A DNA stretch of 64,000 nt from Polymyxa betae A26-41 (GCA_003693705.1 RBZT01000373.1:67861-131860), one strand, 5' to 3'. Shown: positions 2,633 through 62,238, numbered from the stretch's first letter. Numbers and translations: made by a program. The notes: generated by a model from the sequence alone, not told the origin.

Positions 2633-4532
2633 ATGACCATCGGTCTCGGTAGTCTGCTGCTGTTTCTGGCATCTATTGCCATTGCCAGCACGAGCCGTGA
2701 ATTCGACAACCGCTACCCTTCATGCTTCCTCGATCGGCTTCAGTATTGCAAGGACGTCCAAGGACTAGCAGGCACATTCCAATGCCTGGATAAGAAATTA
2801 GATCAGCTGTCTCCAGCGTGTAGGGCTTCGCTAGAAAAATCACCAGCATTTCAATGCAGTCTTGATGCGCTTCTGCTCTGTCCTCTAGTCGACGACCACT
2901 ATGATTTGATGTCGTGTTTATGGTACCATCGTGATAAATCTTTATCGTCTCGATGTATCGGATCGGGGTCCCGCCAGCTTGATTTCGAATCAGGCGGCAA
3001 ATTCCACAAATGCAGCAAGGACAGAAAGAAATTTTGTTATGGCATGCACGGATTTCCTCGAGTCATGGCATGCCTTGCAGATCACCAAAATGATCTCTCT
3101 AATGAATGCAAATCGGCAGTTGGGGACTGTCCAGCATTCAGATGTGCACACGACGCTGAGCATTACTGTCCAAATGCTAAAAGTCATCACGATGTTCTTA
3201 AGTGCATCTGGGCTCATAAAGGGGATGTGTCGGAAGATTGCAAACAGGTAAAACCCAGCATAAAAGGTTTGCAGAAATACCTAATCTAACTAGGTGCTCT
3301 CGCCTCCGTCCTCGCCATGGCTAAGTCATCATGAGCATGAAAGACATCACGGCAAACAGGACCGTGGTAAGCATCATGGGAAACATCATCGCCATGAGCA
3401 TGAGAGGCATCATGGGAAACATCATGGGCATGGGCATAAGGGACACCATGGGCATGAGCATGAGCATGGTGGTCATCATGGGCATGAGCATGAGCATGGT
3501 GGTCATCACGGGCATGAGCATGGTGGACATCATGGGCATGAGCATGAGCATGGTGGACATCATGGGAAAGATCGCGGCAAGCATCACAACGAGCATCATA
3601 AACATCATCACGAAGGGCACCTCCCTGAACTGAAAACGCACGGAAAAGAACATCACGGGCATCTCAACAAACATCACCATCGTCACCGACATCACGAACA
3701 CCGAAGGCATTTTCGAGCTTGTAAATTTGATGTTCGCCGCTTCTGCTATGACGTTGACGGATTTGTCGACAAGATGGCCTGTCTTGCTCACCACGAAGAT
3801 GAACTATCAAATTCGTGCCACTTCGTATTGAAACACTGTCCTGCATTCCATTGCGCAGAGGACGTTCAGAAATTTTGTCCTGGAACCAAAAGCAAGCACG
3901 AATTTGTCGAGTGTCTTTGGGAGCATCGTCACGAACTTTCTGATAAATGTTGGAACCAAGATCAAGATGGCGATAATCACAACCACCACATGCATGCAAA
4001 TGACAAGTGCCGCCATGAGCGTGAGCAATTCTGTCCAAAAGGTATGCCGTTGCAAGAAGGTTGCAATCAATTACCTTACTGACTGGTTGTCTTAAGAGCA
4101 AAAGGAATCGCCAACGCATGATATCGAATGTCTTGGAAGCCACGACAAGACTGGACTGTCTGAACAATGTCGCATGTCTCTTGAAATGCGACTTGCATGC
4201 AAAGATGAAGTTAAGAAATTCTGCAGCAGCGATGACAGTTATCCTTTGAAATGCCTGAAACAGCACGAAGAAGAACTAAATAGTACTTGCAAGGCTGCCT
4301 TACCACAGCACCAATTGATGGTGATGTCCAAAATGGATTCAGCACTATGTTATAGCAACCGTACGACATTTGCGAGATAGATTTAAGAGTTCTGACGCCA
4401 TATACAGGTCCTGTAATTATAGCATTCTCTGCTATTTTCCTCGTCTTCTCTTTGTTCATAATGACAGCAGCTGTTATTTGGCGCAAAGCTGATCATGGTC
4501 AACGAACTGATATTCAGTATCAACGGATATGA
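2633..4532 (+). CDS. Type-I membrane protein with GLG1-like Cys-rich repeats, a His-rich insert and a C-terminal YQRI motif
   Basis: Signal peptide MTIGLGSLLLFLASIAIA; repeated C-x2-D-x3-(F/Y)C...CL-x6-LS-x2-C units. Introns 3248-3293, 4042-4096 and 4361-4407 keep the frame. The last exon encodes TM segment VIIAFSAIFLVFSLFIMTAAVIW, then RKADHGQRTDIQYQRI*. Confidence 0.8.
3447..3566 (+). repeat. Coding tandem repeat, ~30-bp unit x4 (HGHEHEHGGH), third copy shortened to 24 bp
   Basis: catgggcatgagcatgagcatggtgg(t/a)cat units read directly from the sequence. Confidence 0.95.
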
Positions 4533-4617: not shown

Positions 4618-5205
4618 TTATTCTCCATATGCGCCAACGTCTTCTTGCCAGTTGCTTGTTCTGGCCATAACAATGGCTCTTCCTATTGGAAAGCGTTCAA
4701 TAATCGACTACCACAGTTAAGACCACCACCAACCTATTGCTCGGATCCACGCTAAGAGACAGCTCAGAATGTGCAGCGAAGAACTGTTCAATAGCTAGAT
4801 TACCTTCTTTTGATTCCGCATTAGGAGCACAAAAGGAGAATCCGTATTCGGTTGAATAAACGTCGAAAGAATACGCTCTCCGAGTCTGATCTTCTGAGCT
4901 CTGAATTTCAAGTGAGTAAAACCAACAAGCAGCATGGCAATGAAAAAACCTTAACAGAAGAAAATATCGCCAAATCAATCACTTCTGTAGGATTATTATA
5001 ATCTTTTTCATATTTAAAGGAGTAGATTTTTGAGTTTTCCAACACTACCCAGCGCTTCTTCCAAACTCGCAGCACTCTGCCTACAGACAGCATCAACGGC
5101 GACGAAGACATAGACCTCTATAAACCAACTCTGTTTCTCAAGCCATCCCTCTAGCGGTGGATTCTTAATCATGGGCTGAGTTGTGCCAATAGCAGTTGTG
5201 ACCAT
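4618..5205 (-). CDS. Small stand-alone PH-domain protein (5 exons)
   Basis: LEGWLEKQS/RVLRVWKKRWVVL...EVIDL...YSFDV...FSFCAPNAESKE/QWIRAIG; last exon RAIVMARTSNWQEDVGAYGE*. Confidence 0.85.
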
Positions 5206-5525: not shown

Positions 5526-6574
5526 TTACGATTGATCGTAATCATCGATCGCATCTAAATCGTCGTCATTATTATACGGATCGCTTAAGCAATCGTCGTC
5601 AGAATAGCCATAATCATCGTCGGAATCCGATTCGTCTTCCGGATACGAGAAATCTGGATTATCGGCTGCATTCGAATCTTCCGAATCATAGGCGCTATCA
5701 GCATACTCGTCGAAAACAAGGGCATCATGTAAGCCAGAATTCAGGTCGATTCCTTCTCCAACATCTATGCATACTCTAGAAATCACATCAGAACACGATC
5801 TCTATACAACACCTTCACATACCGATCCGACGAGGTAGATGTCAGCGTTTTTCCATTATATACAAATAAATCCCAGACGTATTCAGTGGCATCTTCCTAT
5901 AAAAATGCTGTAAGAAATACACGATGGCAATCCAGCGTAATAATACTTCATGGTTATCCAGCTGATAGCGCCTCATCAGCTGTTCGTATCTCGATTTTGA
6001 ACCTGGGCCTTCAGATACAGGATCGATATCGAAAAATTGAAAACGCGAGTTATCGATTTCGTTAAGTCGATTGACCCGATCAGAGCTAGTGCATATGCTA
6101 CGTTTGGTGGATGGATTCCGCCTTGCAATCTCCAAGCCGTCATTGTTTAGGGAGTTTATACGGTCCTGCAGAGGTCATTATCAGAAAATATCAAACGCTA
6201 GCGATTTAGGCGCACACGAAGTCTATCAGGCAGATCTAGTTCTTGAGCATTTTCGCATGATAGCGTGTCAACTCGTTGAAAAACTTTTTTGTAAATTCAG
6301 AGTTGAGACTCTGTAAGAACCGATAGTCTTACCTTGTGAGATCATATTCGGTCCAGCGTTTTCATTCATTGAGAACCGAGACAAACATTCTGAAGCGCCC
6401 CTGACACCAGATAAAGCTCTTCTCTTACACTGGCCCTTAACCACTACATTGCATCAGACACAACGCGAAAAGCAGTGCAAAACGCCGACCGAGATCGTCA
6501 ATAGGCGATGCATTTCGAGGGCGTTTAACCCTTAGGACAACAATCGAATGCTGGTCCGATCCCATATTTGGCAT
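5526..6574 (-). CDS. IWR1: IWR1-like RNA polymerase II nuclear-import factor
   Basis: N-terminal VVLRVKRPR and C-terminal YDSEDSNAADNPDFSYPEDE followed by an acidic tail, the Iwr1 signature. Confidence 0.75.
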
Positions 6575-27333: not shown

Positions 27334-29404
27334 TTATTGATAAACAGGCTCGAAATCGATATCATGGCCGTGGAGGATTGTCGGCTGCACTGCTGCAGCG
27401 CGCTCTTTCAGAGCTGCTTCGAGTCGCTCAATTCCGGCCAATGCCGTTCTCGATTCTGGAGACATGCTCAACGCAGTATGATAGTGGATTAATGCTCTAT
27501 CGATATTGCCGCTTTGAGCATAAACACCAGCAAGTTTTGTGTGCATCACATCCGATGGATTATGGGCGAGATGTTGTTCTAGCAGAGTGATCGCCTCGGA
27601 GAACTGTTTCTGGCCGATATACAGTTTGGACAATGCCAGGACAGCGTCGACGCATTTGGGATCAATGGAGAGCGCCTTCTTGAACGCCTTCGCAGCTTTA
27701 TCGCGACCTTCAGGCGATCGCGACAAAACGGTTCCGAACAAAGTCAGCGCCCTGGCATTCCTTGGCAATGCTTGAACAGCCGCTTTGGCAATATACAACG
27801 CATCGTTAAATTGAGGCAAAGCGAGATATGATTCAACGAGGCCAGCATAGGCATCTAACTCGCGCCGATCTATATGGAACGCTTGCTTATAGGCCTGAAC
27901 AGCCACTTCTGCACAGCCCATCGCCAACGATATGAACCCTTTCACTAAATAAGACGGCATATGCCGAGGTGCCATTGCAACCGCTTTGTCCAAGAACTTG
28001 ACCGCTATATGAAGCTTAAAACACGATGCCGAACAGCGAACCATTACAAAGCACCTTTCTCCCGTTCACCTCGCTGATCGCAATACAAAGCGACCGCAAT
28101 CCACGGTTGAGGACTGGTCTGATCCAGAGACAGTAAAGATTGGGTTAGGACACCTGAGAAGCCCATAAATCCATGAAAGAAACTACAATTAAAAAACAAT
28201 CACCAAGCTCTGAAGCTTTTCCTCTCATTCGCAGAACCCAGGCGTACATGTCCATATATTCGAGTGCAAATGGATCACATCGATGCGCCATCTCAAATGT
28301 AGCTCGGGCAGCATCTGCATCCGACAGATGCAGTTGGGTTCGAGCACGATGAACCAGAACGTGATGTGTATTAGGAAACTGGAGATTCAGATGGGAGAAC
28401 GCAGCCAAAGCAGAGCGATGCTCATGTAGAGTAGCGCTTGAATGACCTGCTAATAGCTGAACGATCCAGGCATGGGTGGACTTCTTGTACAATGATGAAA
28501 CTGCTGATGCATCACCACCCAACTACGTGCCATCTTTGTTAGAAAAATGAAGTTAAAAGAAAAAAGCATTTGCAAGCCAAGCCAACACCGCATATTATGA
28601 ATTAAGATTAAATGTCCCTTTAGCTATAAATCATGTTATAAAAAATCAAAAGAAAACAGCTTCAAAGCCAAGAGATAAACCAGCAGTAAGATACCCGAAT
28701 AATGGCTATAGCGGCACTGATCGCCATTGGATTTGCATCCAGAACCTTTTGATATGCAGCGCTGGCTGTTTTGACACGACCGAGGCGCTCATATAATGTT
28801 GCCATGAGATTCCAACAAGAAGCGCTTTTTTGTTGGATAGGTTCCAGCGCCTCCAGAGCAAGTTTTACAGAGTCAATATTGGACTGGTTGGTGGAAGTCG
28901 ACTTTAAACGAACATACGCTTGAGCAATCTTCATACGTATACAATCGTCATTAGCGATGCGGGGATCAGCAGACGAATATCTTAGAAGTTGACTGGTTTG
29001 CAAAGCGTCTTCGTACTTGGAAATCGCGCGACGATATTCGCCTTTACCAGCGAACGCTTCTCCCAGCAGCACTAAAGAGTCTGGCAAAAAAAAATCAGAA
29101 TTTGACTAGAAGAAAATGATTGAACAGGAAGGCCAGACTCGAAACTGACAGAGCAGTTTAAGCAAACAGAATTTGAAGGATTATAAAACAAGTTTACCTA
29201 ACCGATGAGATCGAGTCGAGCGTCATCAGAGCCGGACGACGATTGCTGACGGCGAGCTTCCGTGACAAGAAACTGGCCTAGAATGACAGAGCTGTCGTAG
29301 AGGCCCTGCTGGACCAGGTCGGTGACATGCGCCAGCAGGGCGAGGTTGGAGCCAGGCGACGCCCAGGACCCTGTATTGTTAGATGCCGGTGCTAATGCTG
29401 TCAT
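27334..29404 (-). CDS. ANAPC7: Anaphase-promoting complex subunit 7 (TPR protein)
   Basis: LVQQGLYDSSVILGQFL N-terminus, GEYRRAISKYEDALQ, YMDMYAWVL, YAGLVESYL, PRNARALTLFGTVL...EGRDKA, ALIHYHTALSMSP. Confidence 0.85.
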
Positions 29405-29717
29405 GAGCAAGACGATTCTGCGCTATTGTCATCACCTTGTATGCGACAAAGCAACCTTCAACTTGAAACATAACATTTATCATCATGGAGATATCATAGT
29501 TGCTTCCACAGACGTCGAAAAAGTTTTCGGTTGTTGCTCAATTTGGTGTCAAATTGAGATCTAACAGATATGGAATGGTAGTCAGAAGTAATGTTGAGGA
29601 AACATTTTTGGTTTAAGGTTGAGACTGAATCATGCAAACGAGATCCAAGGCGAGTCATGCATAGCAATTCGGGTTAAGATGGGCAGAGGCGACAGGTTAT
29701 ATAAGACAATATATTAA

Positions 29718-31789
29718 TTAACGAATGCTGAGCTTATGTAGCTTCTGCTCCAGCTTCGGTTCGTTTCTTTTGCTAGCGAACTTCGTGTTGGACTTGACAG
29801 TTTCGAACACCTTCCAGAATCGCAGAGTTTCGTCAGCGGCTGCAGAGCAAACGGTCGTGCCATCGTTTGAAACGGCAAGATGCAAGATACGAGCAGAGTG
29901 CCCCGTCAAGTCGGTAACTTTCGCTAAAGAAGGATATTTCCAAAGCGAAAGTTGATTTTTCGAGAACCCATGAGCAGAAAGTATTTCGTTCTCATGTGGA
30001 TTCCAGACAAGACCGCAGACCTAAATCGATTACGTTCCATTCAATATACGATAACATTCATCATTACCTGCGAATTCGTATCGATTGCATTTAAACAAGA
30101 GCCAGATGCTGTATTCCAAAACCGAATATGACGGTCAGAAGTACCACCTCCCGTAGCCAACAGATTCCGAGCATGAGGAGACCAAGCAATTGCCTGAAGC
30201 AGGACGTAATCAGAATTGTTTGATATAGATTTGCATTGATGATATCATGAAAAAACAGCCCATAGTGACAGCATTACGAACCTTAACAGCAGCAGTGTGA
30301 TGCGTCAAGGTATGCCTTGGTGATTGAGATTGATTCAGCTCCCAAATATTACAAATATTATCATTCCCACCAGAAGCCAGCTGGGTTCCATCCTGGCTCC
30401 ACGACAAGCCACAGACCTAAAGGGAGGTTAAAGTTTCAACCAACCCAATGCTATGTCTGCCAACCTCCAGTGAATGGCCTCGGAATGTCGATATGTGATG
30501 ATCAGAAACTCGCACGTCGTGATTGATGATGGAACTATCACGAGATCCGCTCGATAAGATATGCCTGAAATTCCAATTACTTCAATACAGCTGCAGCCAA
30601 ACGGATTACTTATTCCATGCAAGAGAGCACACGCGACCTTGTTGTCCTCTCATCACACGAACCTTCCGCTGTCGTTCAACATCCCACAGTTGCACCTGCT
30701 TCGATGTCGTTCCAATTGCTAAATGGGTTCCGGAAGACATCCACGATAATGATGTCAAGTAATCCTATCGTATGATGAATGCAAAACCCAAAACATGGAA
30801 ATAAACTACTTCTGGATCAGAGGTCTCCATCAGTAGCTCAATGTTTCCAGTTTTTGCATCCCAAAGATACAGTGATTGACCAAGACCGACAGCAAGGATG
30901 CCTTTCGCAGACCTAAAGATCAAGTTAAAAGTTACCACAAAGTAGATTGGAGAAAGCAAATAAGAAGAGACACAAGCTATGGGCAAAGCAGAATAAGTTA
31001 ACCACGACAGAACAAACGTTCGAAGGTTGAAGGACTCAATTACCAATCCAGCAGATTTACATAATAATCATCGAGCAAATCGGGCGCATCGAGCACTCGC
31101 TCTGCTGACGATGGTATAAACCGGTGCTTCTTTCCTGAGAGTTTTCTTCAGATACGTGAATCAACTTGGATTTCATCCCGGACCTTGGGTTTGATTTGAG
31201 CCGGGCATCATATACCGATTTTGAGTGTAAAGAACGCGAAGGTTGTTTTGATGGTGAATTGGCGGTGCCGGGGCCTTCTGGCGAAACGATAAAATTCTGA
31301 CGCCAGGTGCATTATTGTTGCTCGAAGTTGAATTGGAATCTGAGAACAGAGATGCTGCAAGTTGGTTCTGAAACCTGTAAAACGTTTGAGAGACTAAAAG
31401 GACCTTCGAGACATTAGAATCTTTTGAGTACCAACAGCATCGCCGTTTTGACAAACGACCAAAAAATTGCAGCAGAAGTTCATCAAATGCTGTAAAAAAA
31501 CATCACCGTTCTTCTGAATCCACACTGCCGTCTAATAATGGCTGCCAGTTTTCCTTGATACCCTGAATCTGATTTAGATGAGACACAAACTTGCAATCAA
31601 AAATTTTTGAATAAATATATCACAGACTTTGGAAGGCTGCTGAATCGCATGAATCTGCAGATCCGGATCCAGATTGGAACGTATCGGAATAAAGCGATCG
31701 GAGCAGGGCGTCGCTGAAACCGCATTCGGCGTCTTGGGACGGAATGGGGTTCGGTTCAAGTGTCGTCCAGGGGTGGCACCATTTTCCAT
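29718..31789 (-). CDS. CDC20: CDC20/Fizzy APC/C coactivator
   Basis: C-box DRFIPIR, KEN box, [10 protein letters not shown] (Mad2-binding motif), [22 protein letters not shown]40 repeats, AADETLRFW and C-terminal IR tail. Confidence 0.95.
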
Positions 31790-40871: not shown

Positions 40872-41207
40872 AATCATTGACTGGCACAATAACATGTCAC
40901 ATCGAAGTTTAGCTTAAAGGTTCTCAGCTGTCGACAGTCATGCTGCATGATAACGCGGGCAGACGTAAGCTCAGCTATTTGGCCTCATTGTAGGGCAAAT
41001 GGCATTGCCTGTTGAATAACTGGCATTGAATCAGGAAATGCAGCACCTGATGAACCATGCCTCCTGTTCGGAAGATGTGCAGTTAATTGATATCGACTCT
41101 GTTTTACTCTTGACTTGAAAGGAGCAATGAACATCGCAAACGCGATCGTGAGTCAACAAGTTTCCAGGTAGCCGCTCTTCCGTGTTGTGAGCGAAATCTC
41201 ATAGGCA

Positions 41208-42354
41208 ATGCGTTTGAACAAAAATGGCAGCTTCGAGCTTACCAACCGAGATATTCAAGCATTGGGGCTTTCATTTCTGTCCTCTATGACGACACTTGCG
41301 GGAGCGATTCTGGCTTTCGCCTTGAGTCGAAACGATCGCCGATTGATTGCTGGCGTCTTAGGCTTGGGGGCAGGGGTTATGGTTCGTAAACTTTGATTTT
41401 TGGTTTGATTCTCAGTGATGTCCATTCTTAAGATTTATGTCGCTTTCCTGGAGCTTTTGCGAGAATCTCGCAGCGACTTTCGTGAAAACAATACTATGTC
41501 AATGGCGCTGCTGCTGAGCAATGCTTTTTTCTTCGCTGGCATTGCTTTCATCGGAGTCGTACAATGGATATGCAGCTATCTTCAACGACGCCATGAAAAC
41601 AAAGAATGTCACGGGGAATGCAAAGATTGCCTTTGTGAAAGTCCCCACGCAGGCAGTTCGGAAACCGCCCGCTCTCACAAGAAGCTTCCACAGACCGTGC
41701 ACAGCTCAGAAGCTGCTGACAGAGATGTCGCACACGTTGTCTTTAGCACAGAACCTGAACCTCATCGCAGAACACGGAAACTCCCAATTTCGATCATTCT
41801 CAAAACGCTGGCTGGAGCATGTCATAATATTCCTGAAGGAATGAGCTTGTTTATCATTGCTGTTAAGGACCCAGCCCTTGGGGTGCCTATTGCTGTAAGC
41901 ATCTGGATAATAGTTCACAATCTATACCCTTTGTTTAAATGTGCCTTCAGTTAGCAATGGCTGTTCATAATATACCTGAAGGCCTTGTCACTGCAATACC
42001 TTTCCATTTTCATACTGGCAGCCGATGGAGAACACTTGTTTGGATGCTACCTTTCAGCATGGTGGAATTTTTCGGAGCATTAATCGCTTGGGCTTTCCCT
42101 TTCGACTCGTTCAACACTGATTTTCAGGGAGCGGTTTCAGCTGGTGAGACCGATTTCGTTCATGAGAGACGTATGCTAAATGCTGTTCAGTTACTGCTGG
42201 GATGATGATCCATGTAAGCATCACCGACGTTTTGGTGCAAACCAGGAAGCACGACCCAAAGGACCATATTGGCCATGCCTGACTGTTCTTTGGCATGGGC
42301 ATTATGGCTTGGTGTTTGATCTGCCTAGAATATATCAGAGAGCCTCACGAATAA
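41208..42354 (+). CDS. ZIP-family (ZupT-like) metal transporter (4 exons)
   Basis: LGLGAGVM/IYVAFLELL, two HNIPEG motifs (TM4/TM5) and a Cys/His-rich loop; last exon ends EYIREPHE*. Confidence 0.9.
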
Positions 42355-47786: not shown

Positions 47787-48022
47787 TAAGGTACCGATCG
47801 AATAGGGTCCTTAGCAGGATCTTTCTCAATTTTGTCAACATTTGCCATCCAAGTCAAAATATCGCATTGCACTAAACGGAGCAGTTGTCATTTAATGCAG
47901 AGAGCATTTCTCATCTCATTGAACAGCGATGTTCCGGAGCCTCAGGAGACATGACTCATTTTAATTCCGCCTGAAAATCCGATGGCTGCCGGTTCAATAT
48001 CGTTCAAATCTCAAAATTTGTG

Positions 48023-62154: not shown

Positions 62155-62238
62155 TGCACCAGACGGGATTCGAACCCGCGCCTTGCAAGCAAGATACGAA
62201 CCTGAATCGTACGTGTTAGATCACTCCACCACCGGTGC
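62155..62238 (-). tRNA. tRNA-Leu(CAG)
   Basis: GCACCGG/CTGGTGC acceptor stem, A73, anticodon arm TACGA-TTCAGGT-TCGTA, long variable arm, T arm GCGGG-TTCGAAT-CCCGT, downstream T-rich terminator. Confidence 0.93.

What the first reader, a model, noticed from the sequence alone, without database searches (positions are those of the whole stretch)
2633..4532. His-rich, GLG1-repeat type-I membrane protein with a YQRI sorting tail: candidate metal-scavenging or cargo receptor
Seen: signal peptide, about 8 Cys-rich repeats, a ~130-aa tract roughly half His, a second short His patch (NHNHHMH), one TM segment and a 16-aa tail ending YQRI. Known: such Cys repeats characterise GLG1/MG-160 Golgi proteins; YxxPhi tails (e.g. 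YQRL of TGN38) drive adaptor-mediated endocytosis and TGN recycling; poly-His/Glu tracts bind Zn/Ni/Cu/heme pH-dependently. Inference: a receptor that cycles through the surface, binding metal at neutral pH and releasing it in acidic compartments. I know of no described protein with this combination.
Basis: partly seen in the sequence, partly recalled or inferred. Interest (0 to 1): 0.8.

Follow-up and report, generated by a model that had tools for sequence, protein, structure and literature searches.

The report
His-tract GLG1-repeat membrane protein, Polymyxa
This is a probably intact gene of the sugar-beet root parasite Polymyxa betae for a single-pass membrane protein with eight disulfide-stapled repeats, a conserved tyrosine sorting tail and a species-specific 132-residue histidine-rich linker; metal capture is plausible but untested.

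Summary
On the + strand, 2633-4532 carries a four-exon gene with GT-AG introns of about 46, 55 and 62 nt, about 578 aa by arithmetic. It encodes a signal peptide, eight 4-Cys repeats (PF00839 over cut-off), a 132-aa tract with 58 His, an NHNHHMH patch, one TM helix and a 16-aa tail ending YQRI.

The genome matches the Polymyxa betae draft (1,001 contigs, 27.09 Mb).

The gene is the collinear orthologue of Plasmodiophora brassicae PBRA_005431 and a Spongospora protein. It belongs to an uncharacterised plasmodiophorid family with two paralogue clades, ending YQRI or YVRI. Y-x-R-I at the C-terminus is the only conserved tail feature in three genera.

The His tract is unique to this gene. None of the 150 best relatives exceeds 18% His in any 60-aa window, and P. 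brassicae has a linker of about 19 aa at that position. The tract carries a 30/54-nt tandem repeat and a CAT codon bias, so it is a recent minisatellite expansion.

A cycling, metal-binding receptor is plausible but untested.

The scan noted this stretch twice more (s1-658057, s1-693642). I rate it a new variant of a known kind, of moderate interest.

The parts
2633..3247 (+). Exon 1 (205 codons): signal peptide (about 2633-2692) and Cys repeats R1-R4
   Evidence: Translation. PF00839 scores 39.7 bits. It aligns collinearly with P. brassicae P0152 residues 20-205 at 38% identity, E 1e-43. The AlphaFold2 model has pLDDT 85.8 and consists of helical hairpins.
3248..3293 (+). Intron 1, 46 nt, GT..AG, with a CTAAC-like branch site
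   Evidence: Phase 0 joins the two open frames.
3294..4041 (+). Exon 2: His tract, repeats R5-R6, the second His patch, and the first half of R7
   Evidence: Translation. PF00839 scores 30.1 bits. R5-R6 is 49% identical to P0152 residues 225-318, E 2e-28.
3321..3716 (+). His/Gly/Glu/Lys-rich linker between R4 and R5: 132 aa, 58 of them His
   Evidence: It contains 23 HxH and 19 HH motifs. Modelled net charge is +7 at pH 7.4 and +54 at pH 5.5. The tract is absent from all 150 best relatives.
3423..3586 (+). Tandem-repeat core of the tract, with periods of 30 and 54 nt and 80-94% matches
   Evidence: Tandem Repeats Finder. His codons are CAT 46: CAC 12 in the tract against CAT 10: CAC 18 in the rest of the gene.
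3975..3995 (+). Second short His patch, NHNHHMH, between R6 and R7
4042..4096 (+). Intron 2, 55 nt, phase 1
   Evidence: The mRNA-proven intron 2 of the paralogue sits at the same place in the repeat, C-x-K|E.
4097..4325 (+). Exon 3: second half of R7, then R8. The 3' border is uncertain (4282-4360).
   Evidence: PF00839 scores 19 bits, below the cut-off. Alternative donor sites are listed.
4326..4387 (+). Intron 3 in one of 13 in-frame GT-AG versions. An acceptor at 4407 preceded by CTGAC is an equally good choice.
   Evidence: Compared with the paralogue's introns.
4388..4532 (+). Exon 4: TM helix (4410-4481), 16-aa cytosolic tail (4482-4529), YQRI (4518-4529), stop codon (4530-4532). The 5' border is uncertain.
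   Evidence: TM plus a C-terminal YQRI is shared with P0152 and P0003.

Best explanation
This is a real, apparently intact four-exon gene of Polymyxa betae. It is the orthologue of P. brassicae PBRA_005431 and belongs to an uncharacterised, plasmodiophorid-restricted family of type I membrane proteins.

Shown:
- The ectodomain is a string of GLG1-type four-cysteine helical-hairpin repeats, here 4 + 4.
- The short cytosolic tail ends in a conserved Y-x-R-I.
- The 132-aa His tract is a P. betae-specific expansion of the short R4-R5 linker, encoded by a minisatellite.

Inferred:
- The signal peptide puts the repeats in the lumen or outside the cell.
- Adaptor-complex mu subunits read the C-terminal YQRI. 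The protein therefore shuttles between the TGN, the plasma membrane and endosomes. By mammalian rules, a 16-aa tail with Arg at Y+2 favours AP-2 uptake and recycling over lysosomal delivery.
- The tract gives the ectodomain a flexible segment with high capacity for divalent metals (Zn, Ni, Cu). It should bind them near neutral pH. In acidic compartments it should release them as it turns into a polycation of about +50.
- It therefore most likely adds a metal-capture or metal-buffering function to a cycling receptor whose core ligand is unknown.
For: - Gene model and domains.
- Organism: G000 has 27,085,814 bases in 1,001 contigs, against 27,085,946 bp in 1,001 contigs at 45.1% GC for P. betae in PMC6328671. 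The nearest relatives are from Plasmodiophora and Spongospora.
- Orthology and linker position.
- Conserved Y-x-R-I-COOH in both paralogue clades and three genera.
- The paralogue is transcribed and spliced, with an intron at the same repeat position.
- Mu-adaptin domains at four or more loci.
- Mu2 prefers Arg at Y+2. Adding five residues to the 11-aa Lamp1 tail traps it in recycling between plasma membrane and early endosomes.
- Tract composition, HxH and HH density, and pH-dependent charge.
- His richness extends into the non-repetitive flanks of the tract.
- Another secreted His-rich ORF with an HHGHEHEHEH motif lies on contig C920, so His-rich exported proteins recur in this genome.
- ZIP transporters at six or more loci could take up released metal.
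Against: - No transcript or protein fragment of this gene appeared in the 1.84-billion-representative search or in the word search with exon 2. The paralogue's full mRNA was assembled from run SRR18189689.
- The tract is absent from both sequenced sister genera.
- The near-identical 30/54-nt repeats and the CAT bias fit recent, possibly neutral slippage.
- The spacing of the YxxPhi motif from the membrane is not conserved; tails run from 16 to about 25 aa.
- The sorting rules cited come from mammals.
- Nothing tests metal binding or localisation.
Confidence: 0.5

Rival explanations
1. The His tract is a neutral passenger. The protein does whatever its orthologues do, most likely act as a luminal or surface ligand or cargo receptor that cycles by its YxRI tail. 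The tract is then only a tolerated low-complexity linker produced by replication slippage.
For: - The tract is absent from the P. brassicae and Spongospora orthologues.
- It has 30/54-nt tandem repeats at 80-94% identity.
- CAT outnumbers CAC 46:12 in the tract, against 10:18 elsewhere in the gene.
- It sits in an inter-repeat linker where length changes are harmless. The P. brassicae linker already contains D-E-H-G-A-G, a possible seed for the expansion.
Against: - His richness continues about 100 nt to either side of the repetitive core in diverged, non-repeating sequence.
- A second His patch lies between R6 and R7.
- Other exported His-rich proteins exist in this genome.
- 58 ectodomain His residues will chelate metal chemically, whatever their origin.
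Confidence: 0.3
2. The protein is a membrane anchor or cargo receptor for the parasite's secreted His-rich proteins. Its His tract would pair with theirs through shared metal ions, either tethering a His-rich wall or cement matrix to the membrane or escorting those proteins through the secretory pathway.
For: - A secreted ORF with 21% His and the same HGHEHEH motif lies on C920.
- Earlier notes of this scan report many secreted His-rich genes in this genome. These are AI notes and were only partly checked here.
- GLG1-type proteins are ligand-binding proteins of the secretory pathway.
Against: - The TGA(C/G)TCA element that those notes place upstream of the secreted His-rich genes is absent upstream of this gene. 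The only two sites in the window are at 41149 and 47952.
- There is no co-expression or interaction data.
Confidence: 0.1
3. The gene model is wrong or the gene is silent. Either the gene is not expressed, or the His tract or the last exon is not part of the mature mRNA.
For: - No assembled transcript or protein fragment was found, although the paralogue's mRNA is present in a public RNA run.
- The borders of intron 3 are ambiguous.
- The low-complexity tract leaves two other frames nearly open.
Against: - The full-length frame is intact across four exons, with canonical short introns typical of this genome.
- The start, the repeat order, the TM helix and the YQRI end are collinear with the orthologues.
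- No in-phase GT-AG pair using the exon 1 donor removes the tract (read from the sequence).
- An intron of 400 nt or more would be atypical next to the 42-62-nt introns seen here.
- The repeats themselves would break short-read transcript assemblies.
Confidence: 0.1

Closest known systems
Plasmodiophora brassicae PBRA_005431 (CEO96827.1 / A0A0G4INU0, named 'FZ domain-containing protein') and Spongospora subterranea CRZ02301.1
   Same: They are collinear orthologues. Both have a signal peptide, the same 4-Cys repeats (38% identity over R1-R4, 49% over R5-R6), one TM helix and a tail ending YQRI.
   Different: Neither has a His tract; P. brassicae has a linker of about 19 aa at that position. 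Repeat numbers differ: 6 in P. brassicae, 2 in Spongospora, 8 here. Neither protein is characterised, and no paper in the library mentions the accessions.
GLG1 / MG-160 / ESL-1 / CFR (Golgi glycoprotein 1), the founding protein of Pfam PF00839
   Same: Both have PF00839 four-cysteine repeats, type I topology, a single TM helix and a short cytosolic tail, 13 residues in ESL-1.
   Different: ESL-1 is about 150 kDa with a Gln-rich N-terminal segment. Its repeats are longer, with 16 repeats of about 60 aa (from memory). Here there are 8 repeats of 40-44 aa that match only positions 19/27-57 of the 58-position model, in a protein of 578 aa. This protein is not an orthologue. A 1029-aa GLG1-like protist protein (P0018) scores only 2.5e-11. 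GLG1 has no His tract.
Cargo with tyrosine-based YXXPhi sorting signals: TGN38 (YQRL) and Lamp1 (C-terminal YQTI)
   Same: The motif is Y-Q-R-I, with the Arg at Y+2 that mu2 prefers, as in TGN38. It lies at the extreme C-terminus of a short tail, as in Lamp1.
   Different: There are 12 residues between the membrane and the Tyr, against 7 in Lamp1, and no Gly precedes the Tyr. The TGN38 motif is internal in a longer tail (from memory). There is no homology to either protein, and the rules have not been tested in Rhizaria.
His-rich metal-binding segments: histidine-rich glycoprotein, Helicobacter Hpn, loops of ZIP and CDF transporters (from memory)
   Same: All have dense HxH, HH and HEH motifs mixed with Gly and Glu. 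Such sequences bind Zn, Ni and Cu and release them on protonation.
   Different: There is no sequence relation. Here the tract is an internal linker of a membrane-anchored repeat ectodomain, not a soluble protein or a transporter loop.

Membership tests
GLG1 / MG-160 / ESL-1 (Golgi glycoprotein 1) | Pfam PF00839 Cys_rich_FGFR repeats above the gathering score | tested here: met
   39.7 bits on exon 1 and 30.1 bits on exon 2 against a cut-off of 22. The Atlas fold search returns only PF00839 clusters.
GLG1 / MG-160 / ESL-1 (Golgi glycoprotein 1) | Large ectodomain (~150 kDa, many full-length ~60-aa repeats, Gln-rich N-terminal segment) | tested here: not met
   Here there are 8 repeats of 40-44 aa, a protein of about 578 aa and no Gln-rich segment. 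The ESL-1 description comes from PMC7355470.
GLG1 / MG-160 / ESL-1 (Golgi glycoprotein 1) | Type I topology with one TM helix and a short cytosolic tail | tested here: met
   Signal peptide, TM helix (KD 2.64) and a 16-aa tail. This is prediction only.
GLG1 / MG-160 / ESL-1 (Golgi glycoprotein 1) | Orthology to animal GLG1 | tested here: inconclusive
   The best hits are plasmodiophorid proteins and short bacterial PF00839 proteins. A long GLG1-like protein ranks 18th at 2.5e-11. The own genome has only two PF00839 loci, neither of them long. No tree was built.
GLG1 / MG-160 / ESL-1 (Golgi glycoprotein 1) | Golgi residence and FGF / E-selectin binding | not testable with these tools
   This needs localisation and binding assays.
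YXXPhi tyrosine-sorted membrane cargo | Y-x-x-bulky hydrophobic in the cytosolic tail, conserved among relatives | tested here: met
   YQRI here, in P0152 and in P0003. YVRI in P0004, P0006 and P0157. It is the only conserved tail feature.
YXXPhi tyrosine-sorted membrane cargo | Adaptor mu subunits present in the organism | tested here: met
   PF00928 scores above its cut-off at four or more loci of G000.
YXXPhi tyrosine-sorted membrane cargo | Lamp-type lysosomal spacing (Tyr about 7 residues from the membrane, GY) | tested here: not met
   12 residues separate the TM helix from the Tyr, and Gln precedes the Tyr. The spacing rule comes from PMC2199866.
YXXPhi tyrosine-sorted membrane cargo | Binding to a mu subunit and Tyr-dependent trafficking | not testable with these tools
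   This needs a two-hybrid or pull-down assay and reporter localisation.
His-rich metal-binding proteins | Dense His with HxH or HH spacing in an exposed, flexible segment | tested here: met
   58 of 132 residues are His, with 23 HxH and 19 HH motifs, in a linker between folded repeats.
His-rich metal-binding proteins | Measured metal binding with pH-dependent release | not testable with these tools
   Only a modelled charge switch is available: +7 at pH 7.4 and +54 at pH 5.5.
Plasmodiophorid PBRA_005431 orthogroup (YQRI clade) | Collinear repeats, TM helix and C-terminal YQRI; best mutual similarity within the clade | tested here: met
   Exon 1 scores 138 bits against P. brassicae YQRI and 108 against Spongospora YQRI. 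Against the YVRI clade it scores 66-102 bits.
P. betae TGA(C/G)TCA-marked secreted-protein regulon (earlier scan notes) | TGASTCA sites 25-200 nt upstream of the start codon | tested here: not met
   The window has only two sites, at 41149 and 47952, and none near 2633.

The most novel reading that the evidence does not exclude
This could be a receptor that takes up free metal ions by endocytosis. A poly-His tether on a cycling type I membrane protein of an intracellular plant-root parasite would load Zn, Cu or Ni at the neutral pH of the host cytoplasm or soil water. It would be internalised through its YQRI tail and unload in acidic endosomes for ZIP-type transporters. Alternatively, the same tract could dock the parasite's secreted His-rich proteins by metal bridges. 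Neither mechanism has been described for a GLG1-repeat protein or, to my knowledge, for any protist.
Probability: 0.15. Interest if true: 0.7.

Novelty: new variant of a known kind. Interest (0 to 1): 0.4.

Why it matters
- Plasmodiophorids are obligate intracellular parasites of crop roots, and almost none of their membrane proteins has a known role.
- This work defines a lineage-restricted receptor-like family. It has two ancient paralogues, each with a conserved C-terminal Y-x-R-I, and so gives a concrete handle on endocytic sorting in these organisms.
- The P. betae copy shows how a minisatellite can graft a large metal-binding, pH-switchable segment onto such a receptor.
- If the tract is functional, it would be an unusual route of metal handling at a host-parasite interface. 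It would also link to the His-rich secretome that other parts of this scan report for the same genome.
- If it is a neutral expansion, the finding is an ordinary lineage-specific low-complexity insertion.

Tried and rejected
I did not pass run SRR18189689 (learned) to read laying, because that tool takes ids only from the look-up of sequencing runs.
- The word-based protein search with exon 2 gave 312 candidates, none significant.
- Two metagenome scans, with exon 1 and with R5-R6, found no relative.
- The PDB gave nothing by sequence or by fold. The Atlas feature search of exon 2 gave no usable hit.
- The His tract used as a protein query finds no second copy in the genome.
- PBRA_005431 does not appear in any paper text or in the supplements of the P. 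brassicae genome paper. No paper links Plasmodiophora with GLG1.
- The first literature search was too loose and gave nothing useful.
- I rejected the idea that the tract is an intron. No in-phase GT-AG pair starting from the exon 1 donor removes it, and the introns proven or modelled here are 42-62 nt.
- I rejected membership of the TGASTCA regulon.
- I rejected orthology to animal GLG1 (see the membership test).
- The joined spliced protein was never assembled or searched. All searches were run exon by exon, by reference.

Full report
**What is there**

The + strand between 2633 and 4532 carries a gene of four exons: 2633-3247, 3294-4041, 4097-4325 and 4388-4532. The three GT-AG introns are 46, 55 and 62 nt long. 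The exons sum to 1737 nt, which is 578 codons plus the stop.

Every search was done exon by exon, by reference.

- Exon 1 starts with a hydrophobic signal peptide and encodes four repeats with the spacing C-x7-C-x11-C-x11/12-C.
- Exon 2 encodes a 132-residue tract with 58 His, 24 Gly, 16 Glu, 11 Lys and 10 Arg. Two more repeats follow, then an NHNHHMH patch and the first half of a seventh repeat.
- Exon 3 completes the seventh repeat and holds the eighth.
- Exon 4 encodes a 24-residue TM helix and a 16-residue tail ending YQRI.

Pfam PF00839 (Cys_rich_FGFR) scores 39.7 bits on exon 1 and 30.1 bits on exon 2, against a cut-off of 22.

One uncertainty remains. Thirteen in-frame GT-AG choices exist for the last intron. 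All of them keep the TM helix and the tail.

**Organism**

The window's assembly has 27,085,814 bases in 1,001 contigs. The published draft of Polymyxa betae has 1,001 contigs, 27,085,946 bp and 45.1% GC (PMC6328671).

The closest proteins come from Plasmodiophora brassicae and Spongospora subterranea. The gene therefore belongs to P. betae, an obligate intracellular parasite of sugar-beet roots. The draft carries no public gene models, which explains why the protein itself is in no database.

**Family**

A search of 1.84 billion representative proteins with exon 1 gave 482 hits.
- The best hit is P. brassicae PBRA_005431, at 3.7e-41.
- Exon 1 aligns collinearly with its repeats 1-4 (38% identity, 1e-43).
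- Repeats 5-6 of this gene align best with its repeats 5-6 (49% identity, 2e-28).
- A Spongospora protein of 212 aa is the third member of this group.
- All three end in YQRI.

A second group ends in YVRI. It contains the only paralogue in this genome (contig C587, 368 aa) and one protein each from Spongospora and P. brassicae.

Pairwise scores separate the two groups. The duplication therefore predates the split of the three genera.

The tails differ in length (16 to about 25 residues) and in sequence, except for the last four residues.

The paralogue is expressed. A 1,236-nt contig from run SRR18189689 matches its locus at 100% identity in four blocks separated by introns of 42-46 nt. Its second intron lies at the same point of the repeat (C-x-K|E) as intron 2 of the gene studied here, which supports that part of the model.

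**Fold**

AlphaFold2 on exon 1, with 43 aligned relatives, gives a confident model (mean pLDDT 85.8) made of helical hairpins. No solved structure matches it by sequence or by fold. The ESM Atlas returns only PF00839 clusters.

**The His tract**

Among the 150 best relatives, none exceeds 18% His in any 60-residue window. This tract has 44%. At the same position P. brassicae has about 19 residues, which include D-E-H-G-A-G.

At the DNA level the centre of the tract (3423-3586) is a tandem array with periods of 30 and 54 nt and 80-94% matches. His codons are CAT 46: CAC 12 in the tract, but CAT 10: CAC 18 in the rest of the gene. These are marks of recent slippage.

The flanks of the array are also His-rich without being repetitive. 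The coding frame is the only one of the six without a stop across the tract.

With a model pKa of 6.3, the tract's net charge rises from +7 at pH 7.4 to +54 at pH 5.5.

The tract has no second copy in the genome. Its HHGHEH motif, however, occurs in a small secreted ORF on contig C920 that is 21% His. Earlier notes of this scan describe many secreted His-rich genes in this genome. I confirmed only that one example.

The TGA(C/G)TCA element that those notes place upstream of such genes is absent upstream of this gene.

**The tail**

Y-x-R-I at the extreme C-terminus is conserved in seven sequences from two paralogue groups that are otherwise about 25-35% identical.
- According to PMC2133128, the mu2 subunit of AP-2 needs the Tyr, accepts Ile at the last position and prefers Arg at Y+2.
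- According to PMC2199866, the 11-residue Lamp1 tail with a C-terminal YXXI goes to lysosomes. [quoted passage not shown] The tail here is 16 residues.
- The genome has mu-homology domains at four or more loci and ZIP transporters at six or more loci.

These points make an adaptor-read sorting signal the most likely meaning of the motif. The rules come from mammals, and nothing was tested in this organism.

**What could not be shown**

No transcript of this gene was found. There was no hit above 50% identity in the representative search and no hit at all in the word search with exon 2. The repeats would break short-read assemblies, but a fragment covering exon 1 should still have appeared, so expression in the sampled material is probably low.

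Two metagenome scans found no further Polymyxa-like orthologue. Conservation of the tract outside this one assembly is therefore unknown.

**Reading**

The family assignment and the architecture are solid. The sorting role of the tail is a well-supported inference.

The tract is a species-specific, recently expanded linker. Chemically it must bind divalent metals and switch charge with pH. Whether that is its biological role is open. A neutral passenger, a dock for the secreted His-rich proteins, or a wrong model are the alternatives.

The protein contains GLG1-type repeats but is not an orthologue of GLG1. No paper in the library mentions the P. brassicae orthologue or links plasmodiophorids with GLG1.

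I rate it a new variant of a known kind, of moderate interest.

Noticed in passing
L004 1154-2533 (- strand) = G000:C587 about 28714-30093: This is the only paralogue in the genome: 368 aa, eight repeats, no His tract, ending EYVRI. Its full spliced mRNA, with three introns of 42-46 nt, is present in public run SRR18189689 at 100% identity.
   Followed up: yes
L004 734-1102 (+ strand): Next to the paralogue lies an ORF for a small secreted Gly/Tyr/Met-rich protein. It has a signal peptide followed by GYGYGRGMGYGYGGG-type repeats and may be a wall or matrix protein.
   Followed up: no
L016 1337-1729 (- strand) = G000:C920 about 5536-5928: This is an ORF for a secreted protein of about 130 aa, 21% His, with HHGHEHEHEH and HGHEHEH motifs like the tract studied here. 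It fits the His-rich secretome reported by earlier notes of the scan.
   Followed up: partly
window 41149-41155 and 47952-47958: TGA(C/G)TCA occurs only twice in the 64 kb window, against 12.2 +/- 3.7 expected from shuffles. The word is depleted here, as one would expect for a motif that is avoided outside functional sites.
   Followed up: partly
window about 41391-41921 (+ strand) = G000:C690:109251-109781: There is a weak match to the ZIP metal-transporter family (32.4 bits, below the cut-off of 35.1, two TGA inside). It lies just downstream of the TGAGTCA site at 41149.
   Followed up: no
window 4697-5205 (- strand): ORFs that look like the exons of a convergent gene for a PH-domain-like protein end about 165 nt from the stop codon of the gene studied here. 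The intergenic spacer is therefore very short.
   Followed up: no
window 62155-62238 (- strand): This is a tRNA gene and the only Rfam match in the window (51.3 bits).
   Followed up: no
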